Source: Setoptus koraiensis (Eukaryota; Animalia; Arthropoda). Taken from it: 64,000 bases of DNA. Shown here piece after piece: positions 4,736 to 38,501 of this stretch. The stretch lies in contig CM106585.1 of the NCBI GenBank assembly GCA_048013815.1, positions 4,712,001 to 4,776,000 of the forward strand. The letters are read 5' to 3'. Under the pieces are notes generated by a model. That model did not search any database. It was not told the DNA's origin and saw only the letters and a list, made by a program, of their open reading frames with translations. Made by a program: the position numbers and the translations under genes. How positions within the stretch are numbered: the first letter of the stretch is position 1; every line of letters starts with the position of its first letter.

Positions 4736-7700
4736 TATGCAAAACTCATACTGACACAAGCATCCAAATGAATATTACTAACAACAACGCTCGGCGGCTC
4801 CGTGTGTCGACCACATGACGCCATTGACAGCGACAAAAAACAAATCCCGACCAACACAATACACGCCTACAGTATCCATAGTGCGTGATATATTGAGTGG
4901 GGCCCGCTCGAGCCAGCCATCATTGTCAGTCCGAGAGATTTCCTTGTTCAACCGGCATTTTGAGCCAAATATTTTCAAGAACAAAATAACCGAAAAAATT
5001 TATTTGTTTATTCACTCGAATATTTTCAATATTTTCTAACACAACTTTAAAGTTGACAAGCCCACACACGCCAAATGGCACACAGCTTGCCACACAGTTC
5101 CTAAGTGTCAAAGCCTCGCAATCACGAACCGAATCGTGTATTTTTATCAACAGATCCCATTCAATCTATCCGAGCCATATTGTCGATATTCCTCGCAAAT
5201 GGTGGCCTCGCAAAGTTCCAACTACTCGAGGGCGTTTTTCGGTCACCGAAACACCCAAAATTCGCCCCAAGATATGGTCACGATGTTTTCATTTCAGTGC
5301 CCAGATAATTTTTTTTTTCTTTCAATCACAACCAAACCTAAATTGTGTAATGTTGAGGGCGCAAACAAGAAAAAATGTCTCTATTGGCAGCTGGTGGCAA
5401 AACAAGTCCGCCAGTTGTTTCGAGCACATTCCGTTGTTGCTTGTCCCGCAGCTATCTTTAGTGCGACATGGACGCTATAACACTGATTCCAATTGAGGGA
5501 TCCGTCACTGTTCTGTGTGAGGCCTCCAAGGCAACGAGTTTCCTAGCGCTTCTACTGGCTCTAAAATTTGTCTCCATCTTTGCCCTTATATCCACGGGCA
5601 AAATCCTCGATTTTTTCAGAATGCGCACCAAATCAATAGATCAAAGAAAGCATTGTTGACGACATCAAACGGTCAAAAAATCCGGTCAGCTTAATCTTTG
5701 GACAATTAAATTTACAAAACAAAAGCCTCACGTCATGGTTTTTCCCTTAGTTGCGGGCTGGACAATGAAAAATAACAGAGCACGCTAGAGGCTGCGATTT
5801 TTCGCCGCAGCTCATCAATCACTCGTGTTCTTGCAAAAATTGATGCCATCTACTACACATCTCAGGCCCAGCGTCTGATGTGACTGCGCTCACGAACGGT
5901 CCGTGAGCCTACCAGATGTCGTCAGGCAAAGTATTTAAAAAGAATTTCTTTTCCGACCACGAGCATGGGATTTCTCACCCAAAAACGAGCTTTACGCATG
6001 GCTCGACTTCCGAACAGTAGATGAAAAAAGAAAGCAAAATCAGCTCTTTTTTCGAGAGTCCACTAAAATGATTCATAGCGAGGGGCCATTCCTTGCGGAA
6101 ATCTTTTCATTTTTGGCTCTGTTGCACTTTTTTCGGTGAGAAATTTTGTTTTTTATCCGATTAGCGAGATATATCACAGAAATCATTTCTTTCTTTTTCT
6201 GGCGACAATAATAAAAGGTTAAGAGCGAATGAAAATTTCCCGGCTGGATCCAGCGTCTCTGTGTTCGGGGCTAACATCGGCAGCGATAAACACAACGACA
6301 ATAATTATTGGATGAACTGACTAGATCTTAGAGACTAAACGAAAAACAAATTTGAGGCAAAAAGGAAAGAGTTTATGAGAGAAAACAGAGAGAGAAAAAT
6401 ACTCGATCATCATTGAAAATGGATGCGTGTGTTTACGATGCTGACAATGGTCCATGATCACGACAACAGTTTCATGTGTATCCATGCCAAGATAGTATCC
6501 GAGCGACGACGACCAAGATGAGAGGCTTACCTGCCCTCGACACTAACACTTTTGGTGGGTTCATGTGTGCGCAAATATCGCCATGTCGGCTGGAACCAAC
6601 TCGATTATTATTATCCCTTAATGCGAGCACATATTTCTAATATCGTGCACTTTGTTAGATGGCGGCTCCGTGGCGAGTTGTTATTGGGGCGATGATAGAA
6701 CGGATGAGAGAGTGATTGCGAGTGAGAATAGAGTGCGTGCAACCTAAATATCACGTTGAGCCGAAGGGGGCTCTAAGCGGGTCAAATCTGGCCAAACTAA
6801 CAAACTGGATGATGAAATCATTGAAAATAAGCTCATCTGGCCAACTTAATCGTTGGCCCGCTTGCTCTCTCGCTAGCTTTCCAAGATCTAGATGGAATTT
6901 CGCTCGTGTGTGTGTGTGTATTCATTGAGTAAATACGCGCAACAACAAAAATTTCTACAATTGATTGAGCTTCAATCATCACCGAGGCTCCCTCGTCGAG
7001 CTCTCTTATCTGCACGCTCACATGTATTAATGGTATTACGCGCGCCATGAATTCATAGTTCATCCAATAGAGTGACGACAAATGCCGCGATGCTCCCAAA
7101 TACACACACACACACACACACTCACATAATATATAATAATATTAACATAATTACACATACTATATAGTATGTACTATTTAGTGCAACACGCATATAGCTC
7201 ACTAGATGCTACATGCTAGACAAGGTGAATCGAGGTTGATTTGCATAAACTGTCTAATGGCTCGAGCATGTAGCTCGCCAGCCGTGAACTTGCTCGAGCA
7301 ACGGGCCCATTTGCTCCCTTTGGCCAGAGTTACCTCGATGTTATTCATTCATCTTATCTTGGTGGCTGTCTCGCTCGCTGTTGGCGTTGTCTAGTCAGGG
7401 CGAGCGATACTTGTTCACTATTGGCACATGATTGGCATCTCACAACCAATCTAAACCATTTGACCCCTTTGCCAAGGCTCTCGGATGTATATGGCGTAGT
7501 GCATAGTCTCGTATTCATCTGTGCGTTCCATTGATTTTCGTCGTACGGCACTGGGGCCCGTATAAGCGACCACCTGTCACTTGAAATCGTGCATAAAGTA
7601 TCGAGTCGCGCCTCACTTGCGAATTGCGCAAATCGCAAACTGTAAATGCCGAGCGCTCGTGAGTTATGCCACGCGCCACCATTCTGGCAACCTTAGCCCG

Positions 7701-20898: not shown

Positions 20899-23800
20899 AT
20901 GCATCGTCGGCGCCAGATCGTCATCGAGGGCCTAGAAGAGCCAGGGGGCGATTTAGGTTTAGCCATTAAAGGTGGAGCAGAGTATAACATACCCATTTAT
21001 GTCTCTCATATACTAGACGGCTCGTCGGCGTCTAGATCGGGTCTAAAAGTGGGCGACAGAATACTAAACATCAATGGACATGACACTTTTTACATGAGCC
21101 ATGATGAAGTCTGTGATTTGCTTAGAACCTCAAATAGATTATTATTATGGGTCAAATATTCCAGTTATGTGCCTTCAAATGCCAGCGCTCAGCTGAACAA
21201 CACCATCGACAACAACAACAACAACAGCAACAACATGACCAATAGTGATTTAAATGAGTCAACTTTTGAGTGCACCAATCAACAGCAAGCTACAATTAAA
21301 CAACAAAACGCCATTGGTCCATTGGACAACAGTACTAATTATCCAATCATAGGCCAGTCAGTGTCGAGCAGCCAGCAACAAACAACCAACAACAAACATG
21401 CGAGACCAGTAAGATTGTTCCGGTCCCAAGAGAATCTGCTAGAGAATTCAGATTATGCAAGAACTGTACTCAACGATACACGAAGACCTTTAATGGGTGG
21501 CCAATATTTAGGTGCTACTAGCTCTAACTATAATTTGTTACAGCCGAAACAAGATCCAATCAACGGATATCAAGACATTTTCGGCCGTTACAGAGAATAC
21601 CCACGAAAACATTCAAATAATTTCGGTAAGTAATTCTACCCTCGATATCTATTCCCTTTGGTCACTTTGCCGTGATTTTCGGGCCATATTTGGAAACTCT
21701 TGCGCTTTGTTGATGATGCACCACTCCGATTCGTGCGGACTTGTTTCGTTCTGATCAGAATAACTGTCACTTGATCGATTCGCTATTACGAATTGACTCC
21801 ACTCTGTCAATCATGCTCGTTTTTTTCAGCTGACCAAAAAACTGTGTGTCAGGCTGAAAAAATTATTTATAGCGCTTGGTTGGTTATAGGGAGAGAGAGA
21901 GAGCTGAAATATACGAAATAAATCCAATATGGAAATTTCGGTGAGCTTCTACTGGCTATGGTGCTACAATTGCCAGTGGAGGCCGGTTATTAGGACAATG
22001 CAAGTTGATTTCTCTTGAAATTTGTCACAGACATGTGATGCACTAAAGTTGGCCGCTTAAATTGATTATAATTCTTTGATTTTCTTTTTTTTTTTTCGCA
22101 GTCGGCGAATACCAGCATCGGAACAGAAGTGCTTCAGCATCTTGGTTGAACGATGACAGTAGACGATATCTTTCGACACACAGCAACGCCTATTTGCCTC
22201 GTGATGGTCTCACAAGATATTTGAATGAACTGAATGCGTCGAATGAAAATTTCACCGGCAACGGCACTGAAACGAGAAGTCGGCGTGGAAAATTTGAATT
22301 GGCAAGCGACAAATTGAACAGCAGGCCAAGTGGCTCCTGCTACAGACAAAACAGAGCTATAACAAGACAATCGGCCAGCAATATTTACAACCCCGGCAAT
22401 ATTACTGATACGAGTGATACGGACGATGCGGACGACAACAATAATAATTACAACTATCATCATGGACCCTCGGATGCGTATCATTCGAGGGCACTGCAAC
22501 GAACAAGATTGGTGAGTCCATGCAAGAACAAACAAGCAACCAGCCAGCTGAATAGATTGACACACCGGCGCCAATCTCGACAATTTTATTCAAACAATAA
22601 ACATCAACGAGCCTCAATGAGTGATCCAGAAAACAATAGCTCTCTGAATGATTGTTTGACACCCTATTGCAACGACCTAAACAACATGAATGGCTGGCTG
22701 AATAGTAATTGTGACCAGTTAACCATTGGTGGCGGTAATTATGTAATGGGTTCCTTAGGTAGACGCAGCGATGATAGTGGCGTTCGAACAAACATTTACA
22801 CGCACACATTATATAATAATGAAGCAATAGCAGATAATTTAAATAACAAGTTTTACAATGGCCGTCCTTATCACCACCACCACCAGCAGCACCATCAACA
22901 ATTGAGGGCGCGTTCATCTTCGCCGACGGGGCGCGGTTGTGGGGCGCGTAATCGATCATTGTCGTTCTTAATCAATGATGACAACGCAAAAATAATGACC
23001 ACAACAACTAGAAGAAACAGTATGATAAGCAGTAGCGCGAGAAAAGACTTCGAAGAAGATGAACTAGTTCGCGATCATCTTAAACGCAACGACGATCTAC
23101 AATTTGAGATGGATTTTGACGCTCAAATGGCCAGATTGTTTACAGAGAGCGAGAGAATAGATTTTGCCTATTATCTGAATGAGTATGAAACTAAATCGTA
23201 TGGCATTCAATCGTTTATTAGATCCATCTATAACATGTTTGCGAGTTCGCCAGCTAGATATGAAATACTTTTTCGTTACGTTAGAAAATTAATTCAAGCC
23301 AGAGATGTTAAACATTTTGATGAGCTGCTGTTGTTATTTCAACAACAATATCCCTTTGGCACCAACAATGGCGACAACAATAGTTGCACGTTGCCGCCGC
23401 GACAACAGCAACAACAGCAACAACAACAGCAGCAACAACAACAACAGCAACAACTAGAGCAAATCTTGGTGTCTGGCGTGTCCGGCGCTGGCCCTATAAA
23501 GACATTGTCCGATCTTTACGGCCAGAGTTCGGACAAGAGCCCATTGAACAGCGGCAACCACAACCACAAACATATCAACACCAACACCAACAACCACAAC
23601 AATGGGCCCTTTAGCAATAACAATAAGATGGAATGGACCACTGACGGAGGCTATCAAGAGAATTCTGGACAGCGCCATCATCATCATCAAGCGGCGACCA
23701 ATCAGCGTCAACGTCAACGCGGCGCCCACAACTATAGCTCTAGCCACAGTAATCTCCATTTGCACCGGCCCCCGCCGCCACCGCCACCTATACCACGACC

Positions 23801-25557
23801 GAGGTCGTCATTCGATGAGGGCGCCTACTTCCATCACTCTAACTCGGTTGCTCATTTGGCTGGAATCAAGCTAAATAATAGTAATAATAATCAACGGTGT
23901 CAACAGAGTGGCGCTACCAGCGTTTATCCCTACTGTTACAAACAAGCTGACCACTACATTAATGGGCAATTCTGTGGCAGCAGCAGCAGCGACAACGTCA
24001 ATAAACTGACCACTGCCAACGACATTAGATTCCAGCAGCAGCAACAACAACAACAACAGCAACACCATCTTGACGCTGGCGCTGGATATAATCAGTTGAG
24101 AGGGACAATGACAAATGAAGGATCTATCTATCAAATGGATCAAACAGCACCTCGCAAAAACCAGCAGCAGCAGCGCCACCACCAACACCACCACCAGGGG
24201 GCGAGTAGTAGGCTCAGTGACAATAGCAACAACAATACGGCCCCAAATAGATACACCATTTCTAAGCAGGTTGTCACCGATATTGATAGCTATCGTCCAA
24301 TGATTGCGGCCAGCAATAGCATCAATGTCATTGAATTGGACGACGACTATCATCAAGACTACAGCCCTCACTACCAACAGCAGCAACACCACCACCACCA
24401 CCAACAACAACAGCAACCGCACCAACAACAACAGCCACATGTGCCAACTAACTACAACATTTTGCCGGCTGGTGAAATCAACCAAACTAGATCAAGATCA
24501 TCCAACATAAGTTACATAGATGACGTAACTAATGCAACTTTTGCAAACAACAGCAATAGACAGCTAGAACAAATAGATTACGCCACTGTCGAGCCAACAT
24601 CAATGCAAAATCGACAGCATTACAACCAATATAACGACAACAATAGTCTTTCTTCGCAGCCACAATTGACCGACGGAGGCCCTGTTAATCCAATCCAGCA
24701 TCAACGACAACAACAGCACCAGCACAATCAACGGTATAATCAGCAGCTAGATACAAACACCAATAACAGCCTGAACCCCTACGGGGGCCCGTATAGCGGC
24801 CAGACTTCTAGAACTGCCAGGCATCACCATCAGGTATCTGGTGGCAATGCCGCAAATAATCTTGCCGATCGCAACATTCCGCAAAGCAATGCACAATTAG
24901 CCACGGAACTGTCCTCCGAATCCATCGTGGCACCTCAGGCGATATCGCGACTGCCAACATCAGTGGCCGAACAGGTAATAATTAAAAGTAGTGCACCAGT
25001 CAAAACAAAGACTGAAAACGTGCAAATTCGTTGCCACTGCAGTCTCTCACGAATTATTTTCGAGCGAAAATTTACCCCCAAAAGAATTGTAAACTAACCT
25101 TTTTTTTCATTTTCCGAATTTTCTATTCTCTGTATGCGTCAATTTTCTACTGTCTGCGTCAATATGGCAAAACCCATTCATAACAAACGCAACATACGCA
25201 TCGCAGATGAAGGAACAAGCTAGCAACTATGTCAGTAGAAAGAATAGGCCAACCGGAAGCAGAATCAGACGAACATTGAAGGTTAAAATCAAAAAAAGCA
25301 AACCAATTCTGGGCATAGCCATTGAGGGCGGCTACAATGTTAGCGGTCAACTATTGCCCCGAATAGTTTGCGTACACGAGGATGGGGCCGCCTACGAATG
25401 CGGGATGTTGCGAGCTAGCGATCTGATTTTAGAGGTAAACGGCGAATCGACCGTCAATATGACACACGATGATATTGCCAAGACCATAGCCAACGCATAT
25501 TACCAGGACACTAGAAATTATATCGAGTTCCTAGTAGGCGAAAATGTGGTCGAATAG
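20899..25557 (+). CDS. WHRN: Whirlin/PDZD7/dyschronic-family PDZ scaffold (about 1316 aa as modelled; 5' end uncertain)
   Basis: Exons 20899-21625, 22102-24974, 25207-25557, all GT-AG with compatible phases (1, 0). Contains a PDZ resembling whirlin PDZ2 (GLAIKGGAEY...GLKVGDRILNING), an HHD2-like helical domain (LFTESERIDFAYYLNEY...VRKLIQARDVKHFDELL), a poly-Pro stretch, and a C-terminal PDZ3 (LGIAIEGG...LPRIV...ILEVNG...YIEFLV). Confidence 0.8.
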
Positions 25558-31191: not shown

Positions 31192-32805
31192 TTACACAGT
31201 TTTATTCAATACCGGAAATGTGAAGTTATTTGGGGCCAAATTAGCAGATGATTTTAGTTCTAGTTTTCGGACAAAACTTGGTAGTTGATTAATCGAAACT
31301 ACGATTGTTATGATCAATAAATTTATACGAATCACACTCATGAAGTTCATTTTAAGCAATTTCGACGGGCCAATTGAACAGATCTCATCAACGAGCCGCC
31401 TCAGCAGTAAAATCTCATTTCTTTTAATGAGTTCATTCGAACCATCAAGCACGTGGTTGCCTGCCATTCTGAGACTGGCGAAACCTATAGGTCGATGATT
31501 GTTGTGTCGATCATAATTTTTGTCACCAGAGCAGTTTGACCGGTTGGTCATGATGTCAAAAGCCGAAGTTGTTTGTTTATGGGAACGTTCTCTCTTTGAC
31601 TCTTCTCTAATCGCTCGATGATGTGTATTCTTCATGTCAGTATCTACATGTGAATATTGCCTAACTGTTTCTTTTTCACTGCATCCAGAATTAACCATTG
31701 GACGCTTACTGTTTTGCACGAAGCTAGTTACTTTTTCATCTAGTCTCTCGGGCCATCCATCTCGCATATCCAAGTAATGATTGTTTTCCATTAGATTCAG
31801 TAACAAACGAGATTTCAAGTAAATTCTATTGTATCCATCGATTGTCATCAACATGCGAGCTGTTAAAGCTGAATGGTTTACCAGCAGGCTCATGATAGCA
31901 ATTTTTTTGCCCCTTTCTATTGATTCTAGGACGGAAAAAACTCGTCTCAATATTATTGATGCGGCATGAATGTTACCCACGATGTATGCTAGGCTGATTT
32001 GCTGTCTAACTAGTAGTAATGCATCGCGAATCTGTGTAAGTGTATCGAGAATAACTGATGGTGCTAAATCATTTCTTTTGGCTATCAATAGATCTATTCT
32101 ATCTGACATGGACAATGTTATTCGATATGTTATATAATATATGCCAACATGAGTACAGACCAATAAATGTTGATCTGCTGAATACAACAAAAACATGAGA
32201 AAAGGTTTCTTTTCTACAATACAATTCAAATAAAATCTCGAGGACATCAAACTGCACCATATATAAACAAAATAACCATAATCTCGAATTAATTTCAGCA
32301 GAGTACTAAAAAATCTCATCCTGCCTATATTTGGGGTGCCTGTTTTCTGTTCCTTGAGGGATGATAAATCGCAATCCCTCTTGTTTAGTATTAGATCAAA
32401 ATAATGATAATTCAAAATGCCTGGCACAAATGTTACAATATGTAGCAAAAAGACGAAAATGTTTGGCAGGAAAACCACAAAAAAATGGCGAGTTTTATCA
32501 AGTCCGTGTAGATTCTTGAATGAGCTCAACCAATACCTGTTCGGGACCCTCATATCGTTTGCGTAGGTCAGGCAATAAAGGGTATATCCACTAGTTAATA
32601 AGCGTTGAACAATGTTGATTGGTAGCGAAGTGGTCAATTCAAGCGAGCCTGCCAATCTGAGCATGAGCTCAATCCAATAGATACGCTTCTTTAATGTTCC
32701 ACACTTCTCTTTTTTCGCGTTACCTCTATAATCATCGGAGCTAGAGACTTTTTCATTCTGTGAATATTCATAATTTCGAGTTTGCTCATCCGCAAGATCA
32801 ACCAT
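31192..32805 (-). CDS. Gustatory-receptor-like (7TM ion-channel fold) chemoreceptor candidate, 537 aa
   Basis: About seven hydrophobic segments; C-terminal ...LLIITIVVSINQL resembles the GR TM7 T(Y)hhhhhQF motif; a large hydrophilic loop precedes TM7. A 75-nt GT-AG intron (32813-32887) could add an in-frame upstream exon (MLSMLCQTERKHK). Confidence 0.55.
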   Translation of the reverse strand: MVDLADEQTRNYEYSQNEKVSSSDDYRGNAKKEKCGTLKKRIYWIELMLRLAGSLELTTSLPINIVQRLLTSGYTLYCLTYANDMRVPNRYWLSSFKNLHGLDKTRHFFVVFLPNIFVFLLHIVTFVPGILNYHYFDLILNKRDCDLSSLKEQKTGTPNIGRMRFFSTLLKLIRDYGYFVYIWCSLMSSRFYLNCIVEKKPFLMFLLYSADQHLLVCTHVGIYYITYRITLSMSDRIDLLIAKRNDLAPSVILDTLTQIRDALLLVRQQISLAYIVGNIHAASIILRRVFSVLESIERGKKIAIMSLLVNHSALTARMLMTIDGYNRIYLKSRLLLNLMENNHYLDMRDGWPERLDEKVTSFVQNSKRPMVNSGCSEKETVRQYSHVDTDMKNTHHRAIREESKRERSHKQTTSAFDIMTNRSNCSGDKNYDRHNNHRPIGFASLRMAGNHVLDGSNELIKRNEILLLRRLVDEICSIGPSKLLKMNFMSVIRINLLIITIVVSINQLPSFVRKLELKSSANLAPNNFTFPVLNKTV

Positions 32806-34550: not shown

Positions 34551-35096
34551 CTTTCTGTTCTTTCAGAAGATGGTAACAGAAATCCACGGCTTCAATTCTT
34601 CTCTGCTGGCCTAACAATGTAATCATGACGTAGCCTGTCTAATTGAGTTGTAACCCTAAAAGTTGTTTCAAGGTAGTTCGTTGTGGTTGATTGATGGTAC
34701 TCTCCACCACAACGAAGTTTAGAAATTCTTGTCATTTGCATGAAAACGCTGAAAAACGCTTATTAGGATTTGAATTTACGCAAATGAAAAATAAGCGCTC
34801 TCTTGCCCACTTGTGAGATACATGCACGTACTTAATTCATTGGGAGCACCAATGTTCATTTAACAGCAGCAGCATCACCATTGTTCTCTGTCATCAGTGT
34901 GCATTCATTTTTAAGTCGTGATGATTATTTATTCATAATGTCAACAAAACAAATATCATTATTATCATCATTCATGGTAAATTATTAATTATTCCCTTGT
35001 TATCTAATCGTTTAATACAACCCACCGGACAACACTGTACAACATCGATATTGTTTTTACTGATACCATTTTCGCTTATTTTTTCTGGGGAAAAAC

Positions 35097-36407
35097 ATGG
35101 ACAAGGCACCACAACAACAAAAACCAGATATTACTTGTTTACAATTCTTTGAGCAGCTCGAACAACAAAACAATTTACACATAGATACAACTAATAATGG
35201 ACCTAATGTTGCCAATCAATCAACGCAACAACAACAACAAAATACTAGATCTACAACAAATAATAATCAAATTAATGATGACGGCCGCAGCACGTGCCTT
35301 AGGAGATGCGATCACAATTCAAAATTAAGCACCGCGTTATCACATATGCTTCAGAAGGAATTTATGGTGGATGTTACAGTTTCCTGTGATGATGGACAAC
35401 TAAATGCTCACAAACTAGTGCTAGCGGCTTCGTCATCATATTTTCGTACCTTGTTTCTCAAAAAGCCAAACACACATCATTATCCTATTATTGTCTTGAG
35501 GGACATAGCCTTCATGGACCTCAAGACTGTCATAGACTTCATGTACTACGGGGAGGTTACAATCACATCCGAACGATATGATTTAATTATGAAATGCGCA
35601 ACTTTTCTATTGGTCGAAGGTATCTCAAATTCATTTAACAATGTTGTCGCTACCTCACAACAAGACGACACATCGCAATGCAAGATGACTACATCATCTT
35701 CAACATTGATGCAGGATATGTCAGTTGGACAGGACAGCACACTACTTAGCCTGGACACTACTATGTATAGGGCCCAGTTGAGCGAACAACAAAATCCTCC
35801 AATTAAATCTGATGGAAATGATGCAGCTTGTCATAATGATACTGTTTGTGGTGGCCAATCAAAAGATCAAAGGATTTTGCACTATAATTTCAATCCATTC
35901 AATGAACATTTTAGAAAACTGAGAGAGCACATAGTCACAATAACTGAAGAAAATAAGCGACTAAGTGCAAGGCTCGCGTTACTAGAAGCAGGAAATGACG
36001 CCAATCTAACTAGAAAAATTGATGATGCTATTGAACATTCACAGGAATTGGAAACTCTCAGAAAGCAGGTCATGGAGGCTGAAACACGGGAGGCGAAAAT
36101 AATGGCCTCATTCAAAAAAACAAGCAAGGATTTTCGAACTATGTGCTACTTATTGACAGGTTTCAGAATAGATGCGCTGAAAGAAAGAAAATATAGATTG
36201 TCTAGCATGTACGCGGAATCGCCTGATGATGTACTTTATTTTGAGACCAGTCCAGATGGAAGTGTACAATTGCTCCAAAACGGATATAGTGAGAGGTTAT
36301 CTGAATATGTTGAGACGTATTTACAGCGAGCTGATAGTTTTCCAGCCTTCTTGGCGTCAATAACGTTGGATCTATTCAAGGCTTCGACAATGATCAACAT
36401 AAAATAA
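35097..36407 (+). CDS. MAD1: BTB(POZ)::MAD1 C-terminal chimera, 436 aa, single ORF
   Basis: aa about 73-176 is a tramtrack/broad-type BTB (DVTVSCDDGQLNAHKLVLAASSSYF...VIDFMYYGEV). From aa 259 the protein matches MAD1: MAD2-binding motif RILHYNFNP (human KVLHMSLNP), coiled coil, and CTD (FRTMCYLLTGFRID...YRLSSMYAE...DSFPAFLASITLDLF). Confidence 0.85.
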   Translation: MDKAPQQQKPDITCLQFFEQLEQQNNLHIDTTNNGPNVANQSTQQQQQNTRSTTNNNQINDDGRSTCLRRCDHNSKLSTALSHMLQKEFMVDVTVSCDDGQLNAHKLVLAASSSYFRTLFLKKPNTHHYPIIVLRDIAFMDLKTVIDFMYYGEVTITSERYDLIMKCATFLLVEGISNSFNNVVATSQQDDTSQCKMTTSSSTLMQDMSVGQDSTLLSLDTTMYRAQLSEQQNPPIKSDGNDAACHNDTVCGGQSKDQRILHYNFNPFNEHFRKLREHIVTITEENKRLSARLALLEAGNDANLTRKIDDAIEHSQELETLRKQVMEAETREAKIMASFKKTSKDFRTMCYLLTGFRIDALKERKYRLSSMYAESPDDVLYFETSPDGSVQLLQNGYSERLSEYVETYLQRADSFPAFLASITLDLFKASTMINIK

Positions 36408-36458
36408 AAACATCAAATTATCAGTAGCCATGTACATATATGGAAAAGAAATAGTTGA

Positions 36459-38501
36459 TCAGTTAATAATACTGAACTGAGTATCATTGGGTTGCATGGA
36501 TTTGTTATATTCTTCAAGGATCGCTTGCAAGTTTTTTGCCTCTTTGATGACAAAGTTGACATTGGCTATGACCCAAGTGCTTAGCTCATTAATATAAGGG
36601 TCAATCATTGGTTTAGGCATATTAAGTAGCTCTTTGAATAACGAGGGCCACACACTTGTTGGACATCCCTTAAATGTACGATCTACAATCCAGAAATTGT
36701 TTTGTGTGTCCTTTGCGGGCTCTATTTGCTCCCCGAAAAACATTCTGTGTATACAATCCAATGCTCCGAACCAATCTATCTCATTCGACCATGGTTTAGA
36801 GTCATGCATCTGGCAAATCATCATGTCACTGAGTTTACTTTCAAATCGACTACCTTCAGGTAATAGTCTCATATCCATGGCACGATCAAAGCCAACTAGC
36901 TTTATTATGGAAGTTCTCTCGTTGATTTTTGTTATGTCATCCTTTGATGGGTTATTGGCTATGAAGAGATTATTTATATTCAAACTCATGTGAATTATAT
37001 CACACGAGTGTATTTGCTTAATTACCTGGAGTAACTCAAGTGTGACGAGAGCAGCTATAGATTTGGGGAACTGCTTGTGTAAACTGTCGCAAGCGTCGAG
37101 AAATCTTGACAGAGGTGCCAAGCCGGGGTACTCATCTATTAGTACACTACCATCTTTATAAAACACAGCAGGGTTCGCATTCATGACGGACAACTCTATA
37201 TCCGGCTGACACCGTTGTTTGACTAATCTACGATGCAACTCTTTACAAATGTAGAATAGCCAGTCGTTGGCTGGTTGGTCGATCTTGATGCAGCATACTT
37301 TCAACGGTACGATATTCATTGTAGATTCATTTGATTCATCATCTTGCAGTAAGGTTGCTCCATACAATCGATTGGCAGAAGATATATCCCGATCTATCAG
37401 ATACTCATCATTACCAGCTCTAATGAGGGTATGATTTAACTTGATTTTCGGTAAGTTTCTGGAGTATCTAAATACCCCTTGTCTGGCGATAGGCTCATTT
37501 AAACAGGCAAGTAAGCGATTATAGGATGTTGGATCTGCGGGATCAATTGGTCTTTCTGGTAGCAATGGCGCTGGTGTGATTTGGTTAGTTTTTTGAGCTG
37601 TGCCAGGAGTTGCGCTCAAGCCAGAAGAAGACGACGAAGATTTACTGTTGCAATCTCTACTTGTTTCTACAATGGGGCTCAACTTGAGAGTGGGCGAACC
37701 TCCAAGAGAAGGACGAGACAAGCGCCGGCTAGCTATAGAGTTACGTTTTTCGTTTCCATTATCTTGTCTTTTTGCCTTTGGTGTGGATGAGTCAGCGTTG
37801 TCTCTCAAATATTGTGACTGGTCAATCGGATAAGTCAATTTATCATTGTAGGTTGTCGTTTGGTTGGAAATTGTTGCACACCAGAGATCCTGGACGGCTG
37901 TGTGCGATGTTTCGTTGAACTCTAGACATTGTGTTGTTTGAAAACATTGTGGCAGAATAGATAGTCGGTTACTTTGTGTACCAGAACCATTTGGAATGGT
38001 GTTGGAGTTTTGTTGGATTATTTGCTGTGACGATTGTTGCGGTGGCAATGATTGTTGTTGGCTTAGTTGTTGCTGCAGAATTTGTTGTTGTTGCATCAAC
38101 AATTGCATCTGCTGAGTCAAGAAATCAATTTTTTGCTTTTGATCTTCATTCTCTTTTTTCATCTGCTCGTATCCCTTCTTCAATTGTTCGTTCTCTCTGA
38201 ATACTTCATCTTTGCGTCTCTTCTCTAGAATTAGCGTTTTTGACTCAGCGAGTCTCTTGAATCTCAATTCTTCAAATGACAACTCAATACCATAGCACCC
38301 GCCTGGATATAGAGTGCGCGTATCAACGAAGAATCTATGTGACGGATTCAGGTTTTCGTGTATGAAACGCGGCGCCGGGTCCTCTGGCTCAATGTTTCTA
38401 TTCTCTTTTTTATCCTCTGGTGGTGCTGGTCTGCTTGTTGCTGTTTTGGCCGGTTTTATCAGTCCATCATCAACATAAATCTGGAACTTTGCTGGTGCCA
38501 T
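36459..38501 (-). CDS. BubR1: BUB1/BUBR1 (MadBub)-family checkpoint protein, TPR-less, with predicted pseudokinase; 680 aa, intronless
   Basis: ABBA-like FQIYVD (aa 6-11), KEN (aa 32-34), GLEBS (LYPGG...LSFEELR), B56-docking LSPIVE, and a BUB-type kinase fold (IKIDQPANDWLFYI; GSVL; KPWSNEIDWFG) with HGD changed to HMS and DLG changed to GFD. Confidence 0.88.
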   Translation of the reverse strand: MAPAKFQIYVDDGLIKPAKTATSRPAPPEDKKENRNIEPEDPAPRFIHENLNPSHRFFVDTRTLYPGGCYGIELSFEELRFKRLAESKTLILEKRRKDEVFRENEQLKKGYEQMKKENEDQKQKIDFLTQQMQLLMQQQQILQQQLSQQQSLPPQQSSQQIIQQNSNTIPNGSGTQSNRLSILPQCFQTTQCLEFNETSHTAVQDLWCATISNQTTTYNDKLTYPIDQSQYLRDNADSSTPKAKRQDNGNEKRNSIASRRLSRPSLGGSPTLKLSPIVETSRDCNSKSSSSSSGLSATPGTAQKTNQITPAPLLPERPIDPADPTSYNRLLACLNEPIARQGVFRYSRNLPKIKLNHTLIRAGNDEYLIDRDISSANRLYGATLLQDDESNESTMNIVPLKVCCIKIDQPANDWLFYICKELHRRLVKQRCQPDIELSVMNANPAVFYKDGSVLIDEYPGLAPLSRFLDACDSLHKQFPKSIAALVTLELLQVIKQIHSCDIIHMSLNINNLFIANNPSKDDITKINERTSIIKLVGFDRAMDMRLLPEGSRFESKLSDMMICQMHDSKPWSNEIDWFGALDCIHRMFFGEQIEPAKDTQNNFWIVDRTFKGCPTSVWPSLFKELLNMPKPMIDPYINELSTWVIANVNFVIKEAKNLQAILEEYNKSMQPNDTQFSIIN

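What the first reader, a model, noticed from the sequence alone, without database searches (positions are those of the whole stretch)
35097..36407. BTB::MAD1 chimera: MAD1's N-terminal coiled coil appears replaced by a tramtrack-type BTB domain
Seen: one stop-free 436-aa ORF joins a Ttk/Broad-type BTB (aa about 73-176), via an S/T/Q linker, to a MAD1 segment that begins right at the MAD2-interaction motif (RILHYNFNP) and runs through the CTD. No MAD1 N-terminal coiled coil is encoded upstream, where the DNA is AT-rich and stop-laden. Established: MAD1 is a roughly 700-aa coiled-coil dimer whose MIM templates closed-MAD2 formation, and BTB domains dimerise or oligomerise. Inference: BTB may supply oligomerisation or chromatin targeting to a minimal MAD2-templating module, which would be a checkpoint architecture I do not know from other animals.
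Basis: partly seen in the sequence, partly recalled or inferred. Interest (0 to 1): 0.88.

Follow-up and report, generated by a model that had tools for sequence, protein, structure and literature searches.

The report
BTB domain fused to minimal MAD1
In an eriophyoid (gall or rust) mite genome, one uninterrupted gene joins a BTB oligomerisation domain to an already shortened MAD1 checkpoint protein; this domain combination was not found in any other public protein, but it has not yet been shown to be made as one protein.

Summary
ORF 35097-36407 (+), 436 aa, has:
- a BTB domain (Pfam 2e-21; AF2 pLDDT 84-96);
- a disordered 76-aa linker;
- a MAD1 part (Pfam 1e-43) that starts at the MAD2-interaction motif RILHYNFNP (aa 259-267) and runs through the RWD-like C-terminal domain.

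The linker has no stop in frame (P about 0.01-0.02). Independent short-read contigs span the junction. None of the best 150 hits among 1.84 billion representative proteins combines BTB and MAD.

The interpretation needs correcting. The genome is an eriophyoid mite. In at least 15 related sequences MAD1 is already only 240-256 aa (one short helix, MIM, CTD). Where context was available, it lies directly downstream of a BUB1-like gene. So the long coiled coil was lost before the fusion, and the BTB replaced only the last roughly 40-residue helix before the MIM.

Here MAD1 is inverted relative to both flanking marker genes, has lost the clade's conserved C-terminal tail, and is joined to the 5' half of a Tramtrack-like BTB-zinc-finger gene.

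Still open:
- transcription as one mRNA is not shown;
- internal Met codons could give a BTB-less product;
- a second MAD1 copy elsewhere could not be searched for.

This is a new variant of a known kind, of moderate to high interest. The scan noted this same stretch once before (s1-347641).

The parts
35097..36407 (+). Chimeric ORF, 436 aa plus stop: Q/N-rich leader, BTB, linker, MAD1 MIM, hinge, C-terminal domain
   Evidence: in-frame stop 12 codons upstream
35097..35288 (+). Q/N-rich N-terminal leader (aa 1-64). BTB-zinc-finger relatives have a similar leader, so the native 5' end of the BTB gene appears to have been captured.
   Evidence: alignment A4; low pLDDT
35289..35642 (+). BTB domain (aa 65-182). 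It includes the N-terminal beta-strand TCLRR, a degenerate Tramtrack motif.
   Evidence: Pfam 2e-21; AF2 pLDDT 84-96; Foldseek BTB hits, with hexameric CG6765 8rc6 at rank 5; tree
35643..35870 (+). S/T/Q-rich linker (aa 183-258), predicted disordered. Its first part is still similar to the region after the BTB in BTB-zinc-finger kin. It holds the internal Met codons 197, 205, 208 and 223.
   Evidence: no significant similarity to the N-terminal helix of short MAD1s
35871..35897 (+). MAD2-interaction motif RILHYNFNP (aa 259-267)
   Evidence: aligned to human KVLHMSLNP of 1go4 through the family profile; H262, N266 and P267 are invariant in alignment A1
35898..36038 (+). Helix after the MIM (aa 267-298), then the conserved hinge LLEAGN (aa 295-300) and the start of the stem helix
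   Evidence: hinge as described for human MAD1 585-597 (PMC9605988)
36039..36404 (+). MAD1 C-terminal domain (aa 315-436): stem coiled coil plus RWD-like head. KIM stands in place of the RLK motif (aa 334-336). T431 aligns with human T716. The clade's conserved C-terminal tail is missing.
   Evidence: 4dzo/7b1f at 3e-27 by sequence and as top fold hits; alignment A1
36403..36408 (+). AATAAA hexamer overlapping the stop codon (36405-36407)
   Evidence: read directly from the sequence
36459..38501 (-). BUB1-like gene (680 aa, weak kinase-domain match), tail-to-tail with the chimera and 51 bp away. In relatives it lies upstream of MAD1 on the same strand.
25207..25557 (+). C-terminal PDZ exon of a whirlin-like gene, used as the second synteny marker. 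In relatives it lies just downstream of MAD1, convergent with it.

Best explanation
**What it is.** A real fusion gene specific to this eriophyoid mite lineage.

**How it arose.** Eriophyoid mites inherited a naturally minimal MAD1 of about 245 aa: a short helix, the MIM, a hinge and the RWD-like C-terminal domain. It sits directly downstream of a BUB1-like gene. In this lineage the MAD1 segment was inverted in place, between the BUB1-like gene and a whirlin-like gene. It lost its N-terminal helix and its conserved C-terminal tail. It became joined in frame to the 5' half (leader, BTB and part of the S-rich spacer) of a Tramtrack-like BTB-2xC2H2 gene, whose zinc fingers are absent.

**How it likely works.** The product would still bind MAD2 through the MIM and dimerise through the C-terminal stem and head. 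It would act as the closed-MAD2 template. The BTB would pair (or further multimerise) the N-terminal side of the MIM in place of the lost coiled-coil helix.

**Shown:** domain content, open frame, uniqueness, the ancestral short MAD1, and the rearrangement.

**Inferred:** a single mRNA and protein, MAD2 binding, and the role of the BTB.
For: - **Domains and motifs:**
- **Open frame:** the linker is stop-free in frame, P about 0.012-0.017.
- **Assembly:** contigs from other runs span BTB C-terminus, linker, MAD1 and the BUB1-like gene. A contig from a slightly different strain or species (5 differences in 321 bases) spans the tail-to-tail junction (X1).
- **Ancestral short MAD1:** 15 relatives of 240-288 aa share a Met at the same place; the longer ones carry only an upstream in-frame extension. 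Their helix matches MAD profile positions 443-483, while the chimera starts at 483. The oribatid Oppiella nova still has a 773-aa MAD1.
- **Synteny:** the order BUB1-like, then MAD1, then a convergent PDZ exon is seen in L001 and L004, and BUB1-like followed by MAD1 on the same strand in L008 and L009. In the window both flanking genes keep their relative order and orientation and only MAD1 is flipped.
- **Constraint on the MAD1 part:** its end branch of 0.63 is close to the median of 0.57. All family-invariant residues are kept, including H262, N266, P267 and T431.
- **Constraint on the BTB part:** its Pfam score of 76.7 bits is close to the 80-84 bits of intact relatives.
- **Gene structure:** 75-84% of eriophyoid genes lack introns (PMC7738191; doi 10.64898/2026.08.24.746826). 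No splice joints were seen.
- **Possible transcription:** run X5 covers only genic parts, including both halves (35207-35551, 35753-35992, 36160-36506), which looks like RNA.
Against: - No read or contig from a run known to be RNA spans BTB to MIM. X5 has a gap at 35552-35752, and the library type of X2-X7 is not on record.
- In-frame Met codons at aa 197, 205, 208 and 223 would give 214-240-aa products, the size of the relatives' MAD1.
- The BTB is 3-10 times more diverged from its kin than they are from each other. This could mean relaxed constraint.
- MAD1 duplicates are common in relatives (L008, L009, P0001, P0152). A second, ordinary copy may therefore exist elsewhere in this genome, and I could not search the genome.
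- The RLK motif reads KIM, and the Tramtrack motif is degenerate (TCLRRC against FxLRWN).
Confidence: 0.6

Rival explanations
1. Two products from one open frame. The working checkpoint protein is a BTB-less short MAD1 that starts at an internal Met (aa 197-223) from an internal promoter, as in relatives. The long BTB-containing form is minor or has an unrelated role.
For: Internal Mets lie 36-62 residues before the MIM, against 38-59 in relatives. AF2 with the MAD1 alignment draws a low-confidence helix at aa 200-232. X5 depth is higher on 35753-35992 (14.9) than on the BTB part (6.8).
Against: The segment shows no significant similarity to the relatives' N-terminal helix: HMM score -0.2, and 155 of the 816 shuffles that scored did as well. 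No promoter motif is shared with the relatives' upstream regions. The frame is kept open across the whole linker. The X5 depths are low and patchy.
Confidence: 0.17
2. An evolutionary by-product. The chimera is a young or decaying rearrangement product without checkpoint function, and an ordinary short MAD1 elsewhere in the genome does the work.
For: MAD1 is often duplicated and rearranged in this clade. The region between 25.6 and 35 kb carries insertions and duplications (scan note s1-347662). The BTB branch is long. The conserved C-terminal tail is lost.
Against: The gene sits at the ancestral MAD1 position, next to the BUB1-like gene. The MAD1 part is no more diverged than its orthologues. 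There is no stop or frameshift in 436 codons, and both domains score like intact ones. No remnant of the lost pieces is left, which argues against a very recent event.
Confidence: 0.15
3. Assembly artefact: two unrelated loci were joined in silico.
For: Short-read contigs break several times inside the BTB part (35079-35118, 35306-35334, 35494-35519).
Against: One X4 contig runs from inside the BTB (35519, aa 141) through the linker and MAD1 into the BUB1-like gene. X2 has a contig over 35519-35935. Depth is continuous. The breaks are inside the BTB, not at the junction, and fit heterozygous sites: X2 carries an alternative upstream haplotype at 35079.
Confidence: 0.03

Closest known systems
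Canonical MAD1 (human MAD1L1, 718 aa; Pfam PF05557)
   Same: It has the MAD2-interaction motif, the helix after it, the flexible hinge, the stem coiled coil and the RWD-like head. The threonine aligned with T716 is kept.
   Different: It lacks about 480 residues of N-terminal coiled coil and also helix alpha1 just before the MIM. RLK reads KIM. A BTB domain sits at the N-terminus.
Short MAD1 of other eriophyoid mites (P0002-P0016; loci L001, L004, L008, L009)
   Same: The MIM-to-CTD module is the same at 52-58% identity. It neighbours the same BUB1-like gene. KIL/KIM stands in place of RLK.
   Different: The relatives start with a roughly 25-residue amphipathic helix and end in a conserved tail (M-S-M-x-M-S-T-T-I-Q-P-N-P). 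The chimera has neither, carries a BTB instead, and lies on the opposite strand relative to its neighbours.
Engineered MAD1(485-718) fragment used for in-vitro checkpoint-complex assembly
   Same: The extent is almost the same as the natural short MAD1: coiled coil around the MIM, hinge and CTD (PMC9605988; profile alignment).
   Different: That fragment is a laboratory truncation that keeps helix alpha1. Here alpha1 is replaced by a linker and a BTB domain.
Tramtrack-group BTB-C2H2 transcription factors (arthropod-specific; relatives P0017-P0025; Drosophila CG6765 structure 8rc6)
   Same: It has the BTB fold with the N-terminal strand. It is sister to a clade of BTB plus 2xC2H2 proteins at 53-56% identity. 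Wider kin carry FCLKWN or FCLRRN (PMC11426971).
   Different: No zinc fingers remain. The motif has degenerated to TCLRRC. Hexamer formation was not tested.

Membership tests
MAD1 (PF05557) | MAD2-interaction motif [KR]-[IV]-[LV]-H-x-x-x-N-P | tested here: met
   RILHYNFNP at aa 259-267. The family profile aligns this motif to KVLHMSLNP of 1go4. H262, N266 and P267 are invariant.
MAD1 (PF05557) | C-terminal stem coiled coil plus RWD-like head | tested here: met
   4dzo/7b1f match at 3e-27 by sequence and are the top Foldseek hits, followed by Spc24/Spc25 RWD domains.
MAD1 (PF05557) | Long N-terminal coiled coil (about 480 aa) including helix alpha1 before the MIM | tested here: not met
   The Pfam match starts at profile position 483. 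tBLASTn of N-terminal parts is negative. The HMM of the relatives' helix is not significant.
MAD1 (PF05557) | RLK motif that binds phosphorylated BUB1 CD1 and CDC20 | tested here: not met
   The aligned residues are K334-I335-M336. Relatives have K-I-L.
MAD1 (PF05557) | Threonine equivalent to human T716 (MPS1 site) | tested here: met
   T431 aligns with T716 and is invariant in alignment A1. Phosphorylation itself was not tested.
MAD1 (PF05557) | Forms a 2:2 complex with MAD2 | not testable with these tools
   No multimer prediction or biochemistry is available. MAD2 of this genome was not located.
BTB/POZ (PF00651) | BTB fold | tested here: met
   Pfam 76.7 bits; AF2 pLDDT 84-96; Foldseek probability 1.0 to many BTB structures.
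Tramtrack-group BTB | N-terminal FxLRWN motif | tested here: inconclusive
   The chimera has TCLRRC: L and R are kept, while F, W and N are changed. More distant kin have FCLKWN or FCLRRN, and the closest kin have V-I-K-R-P-Q (motif from PMC11426971).
Tramtrack-group BTB | Hexamer through the A2-B3 interface | not testable with these tools
   Only monomer models were possible. 8rc6 ranks 5th among the fold hits, which does not discriminate.
BTB-C2H2 transcription factor | C-terminal C2H2 zinc fingers | tested here: not met
   Relatives have two fingers. The ORF has none, and there is no remnant anywhere in the window.

The most novel reading that the evidence does not exclude
Eriophyoid mites run their spindle checkpoint on a natural minimal MAD1 that has lost every known N-terminal targeting region. 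In this lineage a Tramtrack-type BTB turns that minimal module into a multivalent MAD1:MAD2 template (possibly hexameric), or tethers it to chromatin by mixing with other BTB factors. This would be a way of placing or clustering the MAD2 template that is not known in any other animal.
Probability: 0.2. Interest if true: 0.8.

Novelty: new variant of a known kind. Interest (0 to 1): 0.62.

Why it matters
MAD1's long N-terminal coiled coil is thought to place the MAD1:MAD2 template at kinetochores and nuclear pores. The part from residue 485 onward is what is used to study catalysis in vitro. Eriophyoid mites seem to have made that same cut in nature, and one lineage then added an unrelated oligomerisation domain.

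If the fusion protein is made and works, it is a natural experiment. It would show what the region before the MIM must provide (pairing of two MIMs, or nothing more), and how a checkpoint template can be localised without its usual N-terminus.

It also documents how a fusion gene arose through a local inversion in one of the most compact animal genomes.

Tried and rejected
1. **Remnant of the relatives' N-terminal helix in the linker.** MAFFT suggested a match, but an HMM of that helix scores -0.2 on the linker, and 155 of the 816 shuffles that scored did as well. Rejected.
2. **N-terminal MAD1 encoded separately nearby.** The 983-aa ORF at 22146-25097 gave one weak tBLASTn hit (E 0.03). Pairwise BLASTP shows only a 51-residue coil-like match, and the Atlas features point to a whirlin-like multi-PDZ gene. 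Rejected.
3. **One alignment of the chimera with both families for structure prediction.** MAFFT aligned the BTB rows onto the MAD1 rows because of a chance resemblance (D-V-T..D-D....N-A-H in both). I ran two predictions instead, each with one family.
4. **Shared promoter words or E2F-like sites.** I compared the relatives' MAD1 upstream regions with the chimera's upstream or linker DNA. Nothing was found.
5. **Rfam scan of the window.** No match.
6. **A second MAD1, MAD2 or the parent BTB gene in the same genome.** There is no whole-genome search tool. The scan's notes hold nothing under MAD1 or MAD2 or by sequence, and a blank there means nothing.
7. **Fold search to decide between Tramtrack-type and ordinary BTB.** It does not discriminate.
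8. **Species names for the short MAD1 clusters.** None carry names. The clade assignment rests on the window's convertase gene: 75% identity to Fragariocoptes setiger and 69% to Aceria tosichella.

Full report
**Observation.**
- The window holds an ATG-started ORF at 35097-36407 (+) of 436 aa. An in-frame stop lies 12 codons upstream, in AT-rich DNA.
- Pfam finds BTB at aa 82-182 (2e-21) and MAD at aa 256-430, which corresponds to profile positions 483-660 of 661 (1.3e-43).
- The last 118 residues match the human MAD1 C-terminal domain structures 4dzo and 7b1f at 3e-27.
- A profile of the family aligns aa 259-267 (RILHYNFNP) to the MAD2-interaction motif of human MAD1 in 1go4.
- Two AlphaFold runs, each with the alignment of one family, give a confident BTB fold (aa 65-182, pLDDT 84-96), a disordered linker (aa 186-265), and a MAD1 part with helix, hinge, stem helix and beta-sheet head (pLDDT 60-84). 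Foldseek returns BTB domains for one model. For the other it returns 4dzo/7b1f, followed by Spc24/Spc25 RWD domains.
- The 74-codon linker has no stop in frame, against 3 and 7 in the other frames (P about 0.012-0.017).

**Is the join real?**
- Logan contigs of other runs reproduce it. One X4 contig runs from 35519 (inside the BTB) through the linker and MAD1 into the neighbouring gene, up to 39000. X2 has a contig over 35519-35935. Depth is continuous and no joints were reported.
- Contig breaks lie inside the BTB part, not at the junction. X2 also carries an alternative upstream haplotype joining at 35079. This fits heterozygosity.
- These runs may include the sample behind the assembly, so they confirm the sequence rather than provide independent biology.
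- X1 differs at 5 of 321 bases and spans the tail-to-tail junction with the neighbour (36245-36565).

**Organism and gene structure.**
- A neuroendocrine-convertase ORF in the window is most similar, among named proteins, to Fragariocoptes setiger (75%) and Aceria tosichella (69%). Both are eriophyoid mites.
- In this group 75-84% of genes lack introns, and gene order is poorly conserved (PMC7738191; doi 10.64898/2026.08.24.746826).
- A single-exon reading of the ORF is therefore the default.

**What relatives have.**
- A protein search gave 15 MAD-only proteins of 240-288 aa at 47-58% identity. All share a Met at the same place, then a roughly 25-residue amphipathic helix, a short spacer, the MIM ([YF]-R-[VI]-x-H-x-x-x-N-P), the CTD, and a conserved tail absent from canonical MAD1.
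- In L001 and L004 an in-frame stop lies 0-10 codons before that Met. The gene starts 210-265 bp after the stop of a BUB1-like gene on the same strand. There is no room for upstream exons.
- The same order holds in L008 and L009.
- In several relatives the Pfam MAD match extends over the helix to profile positions 443-452. The family profile aligns the helix to alpha1 of human MAD1 485-584.
- An oribatid mite (Oppiella nova) still has a 773-aa MAD1.
- So the long coiled coil was lost in the eriophyoid lineage before this fusion. The natural short MAD1 is close in extent to the MAD1(485-718) fragment used in vitro (PMC9605988).

**What changed here.**
- The chimera's MAD match starts at profile position 483. 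An HMM of the relatives' helix finds nothing significant in the linker. The conserved tail is missing.
- Two flanking markers keep the same relative order and orientation as in L001 and L004: the BUB1-like gene (36459-38501, -) and the last PDZ exon of a whirlin-like gene (25207-25557, +). MAD1 alone is flipped, so its stop codon now lies 51 bp from the stop of the BUB1-like gene.
- About 9.5 kb lies between the PDZ exon and the chimera, including a region another note describes as a duplication-insertion structure.
- The BTB half is 53-56% identical to BTB plus 2xC2H2 proteins of about 300 aa in relatives. Similarity continues past the BTB into their S-rich spacer. No zinc-finger remnant exists in the window.
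- The neighbours of those genes in L005 and L006 are not in the window.
- The simplest history is a local inversion of MAD1 plus capture of the 5' half of a BTB-zinc-finger gene. The order of these events is inferred.

**Constraint.**
- In a tree of MIM-CTD modules the chimera is sister to all 29 short MAD1s (SH-aLRT 96 and 93). Its end branch of 0.63 is near the median of 0.57. It keeps every family-invariant residue, including the MIM residues and T431, which aligns with human T716.
- The RLK motif reads KIM here and KIL in relatives, so that change is clade-wide.
- In the BTB tree the chimera is sister (96) to the 10 BTB-zinc-finger relatives. It is much more diverged from them than they are from each other. 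It could be an old paralogue, or a copy that sped up after losing its fingers.
- Its Pfam score (76.7 bits) is close to theirs (80-84 bits).

**Uniqueness.**
- phmmer of the whole protein against 1.84 billion representatives gave 11,540 hits. None of the best 150 matches both halves.
- The two-stretch hits are double MAD1 modules (P0001, P0152) or multi-BTB proteins.
- Full-text searches found no paper that describes a BTB-MAD1 fusion, and the two eriophyoid genome papers do not mention checkpoint genes.

**Expression.**
- This is the weak point. The library type of the holding runs is not on record.
- X5 covers only genic parts of the 5.5-kb stretch, including both halves of the chimera, at depths of 2.5-15. 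This looks like RNA, but it leaves 35552-35752 uncovered.
- X6, from the same study, holds half of the sampled words of 35540-35880.
- No run shows a single molecule from BTB to MIM.
- In-frame Mets at aa 197, 205, 208 and 223 could start a BTB-less product of the ancestral size.

**Mechanism (inferred).**
- The retained MIM, hinge, stem, head and T716-equivalent are the parts that, in human MAD1, hold closed MAD2 and present CDC20 (PMC9605988).
- The C-terminal stem and head can still dimerise the protein.
- The BTB, a dimerising and in Tramtrack-type domains multimerising module (PMC11426971), would pair the chains on the N-terminal side of the MIM where alpha1 used to be.
- It might add clustering or new partners.

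**Verdict.**
- This is a new variant of a known kind. I put 0.6 on a real fusion protein.
- The clade-wide minimal MAD1 next to a BUB1-like gene is at least as noteworthy as the fusion itself.

Noticed in passing
L001:5558-8539, L004:5719-8747, L008:2814-7410, L009:1889-6630: Related eriophyoid contigs carry a 240-256-aa 'minimal' MAD1 (short helix, MIM, CTD) directly downstream of a BUB1-like gene on the same strand. This adjacency is conserved even though eriophyoid gene order is reported to be poorly conserved.
   Followed up: partly
L008:5890-7410; L009:1889-2620 and 5866-6630; L013:1594-2961 (P0001); P0152: MAD1 is repeatedly duplicated in this clade. L008 has a tandem pair. L009 has copies on both sides of the BUB1-like gene. 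P0001 and P0152 are single ORFs with a full MIM-CTD module followed by a second CTD without a MIM.
   Followed up: partly
alignment A1, C-terminal columns (relatives P0002-P0016): Short MAD1s of relatives end in a conserved tail (M-S-M-x-M-S-T-T-I-Q-P-N-P-x-[YF]). It is absent from canonical MAD1 and from the chimera, and its function is unknown.
   Followed up: no
window 20899-25557 (+): Three ORFs (a PDZ at 20899-21633, a 983-aa low-complexity ORF at 22146-25097, and a PDZ at 25207-25557) look like pieces of one whirlin-like multi-PDZ gene. The last PDZ exon is conserved at 71-78% DNA identity with relatives.
   Followed up: partly
window 35367-35444 versus relatives' MAD1 hinge region: A chance resemblance exists between the BTB strand region (V-D-V-T..C-D-D-G..N-A-H-K-L-V-L) and the MAD1 hinge/stem (A-D-V-T-R-R-I-D-D-A-V-N-N-A-H). 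It makes MAFFT align the two families onto each other and is a trap for automatic alignments.
   Followed up: yes
window about 35050-35079: Run X2 holds an alternative sequence upstream of 35079, similar to the window's but with small differences. It is probably a second haplotype of the promoter or 5' region of the chimera.
   Followed up: no
PMC11426971 (literature), compare L008 from a plant metagenome: The Tramtrack-BTB paper reports a few plant proteins with the TTK motif and ascribes them to lateral transfer. Eriophyoid mite contigs occur in plant sequencing data, so contamination by such mites is an alternative worth checking.
   Followed up: no
window 31192-32805 (-): A 537-aa ORF has no Pfam match and no counterpart in the related loci. 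It lies in the 9.5-kb stretch between the whirlin-like gene and the chimera.
   Followed up: no
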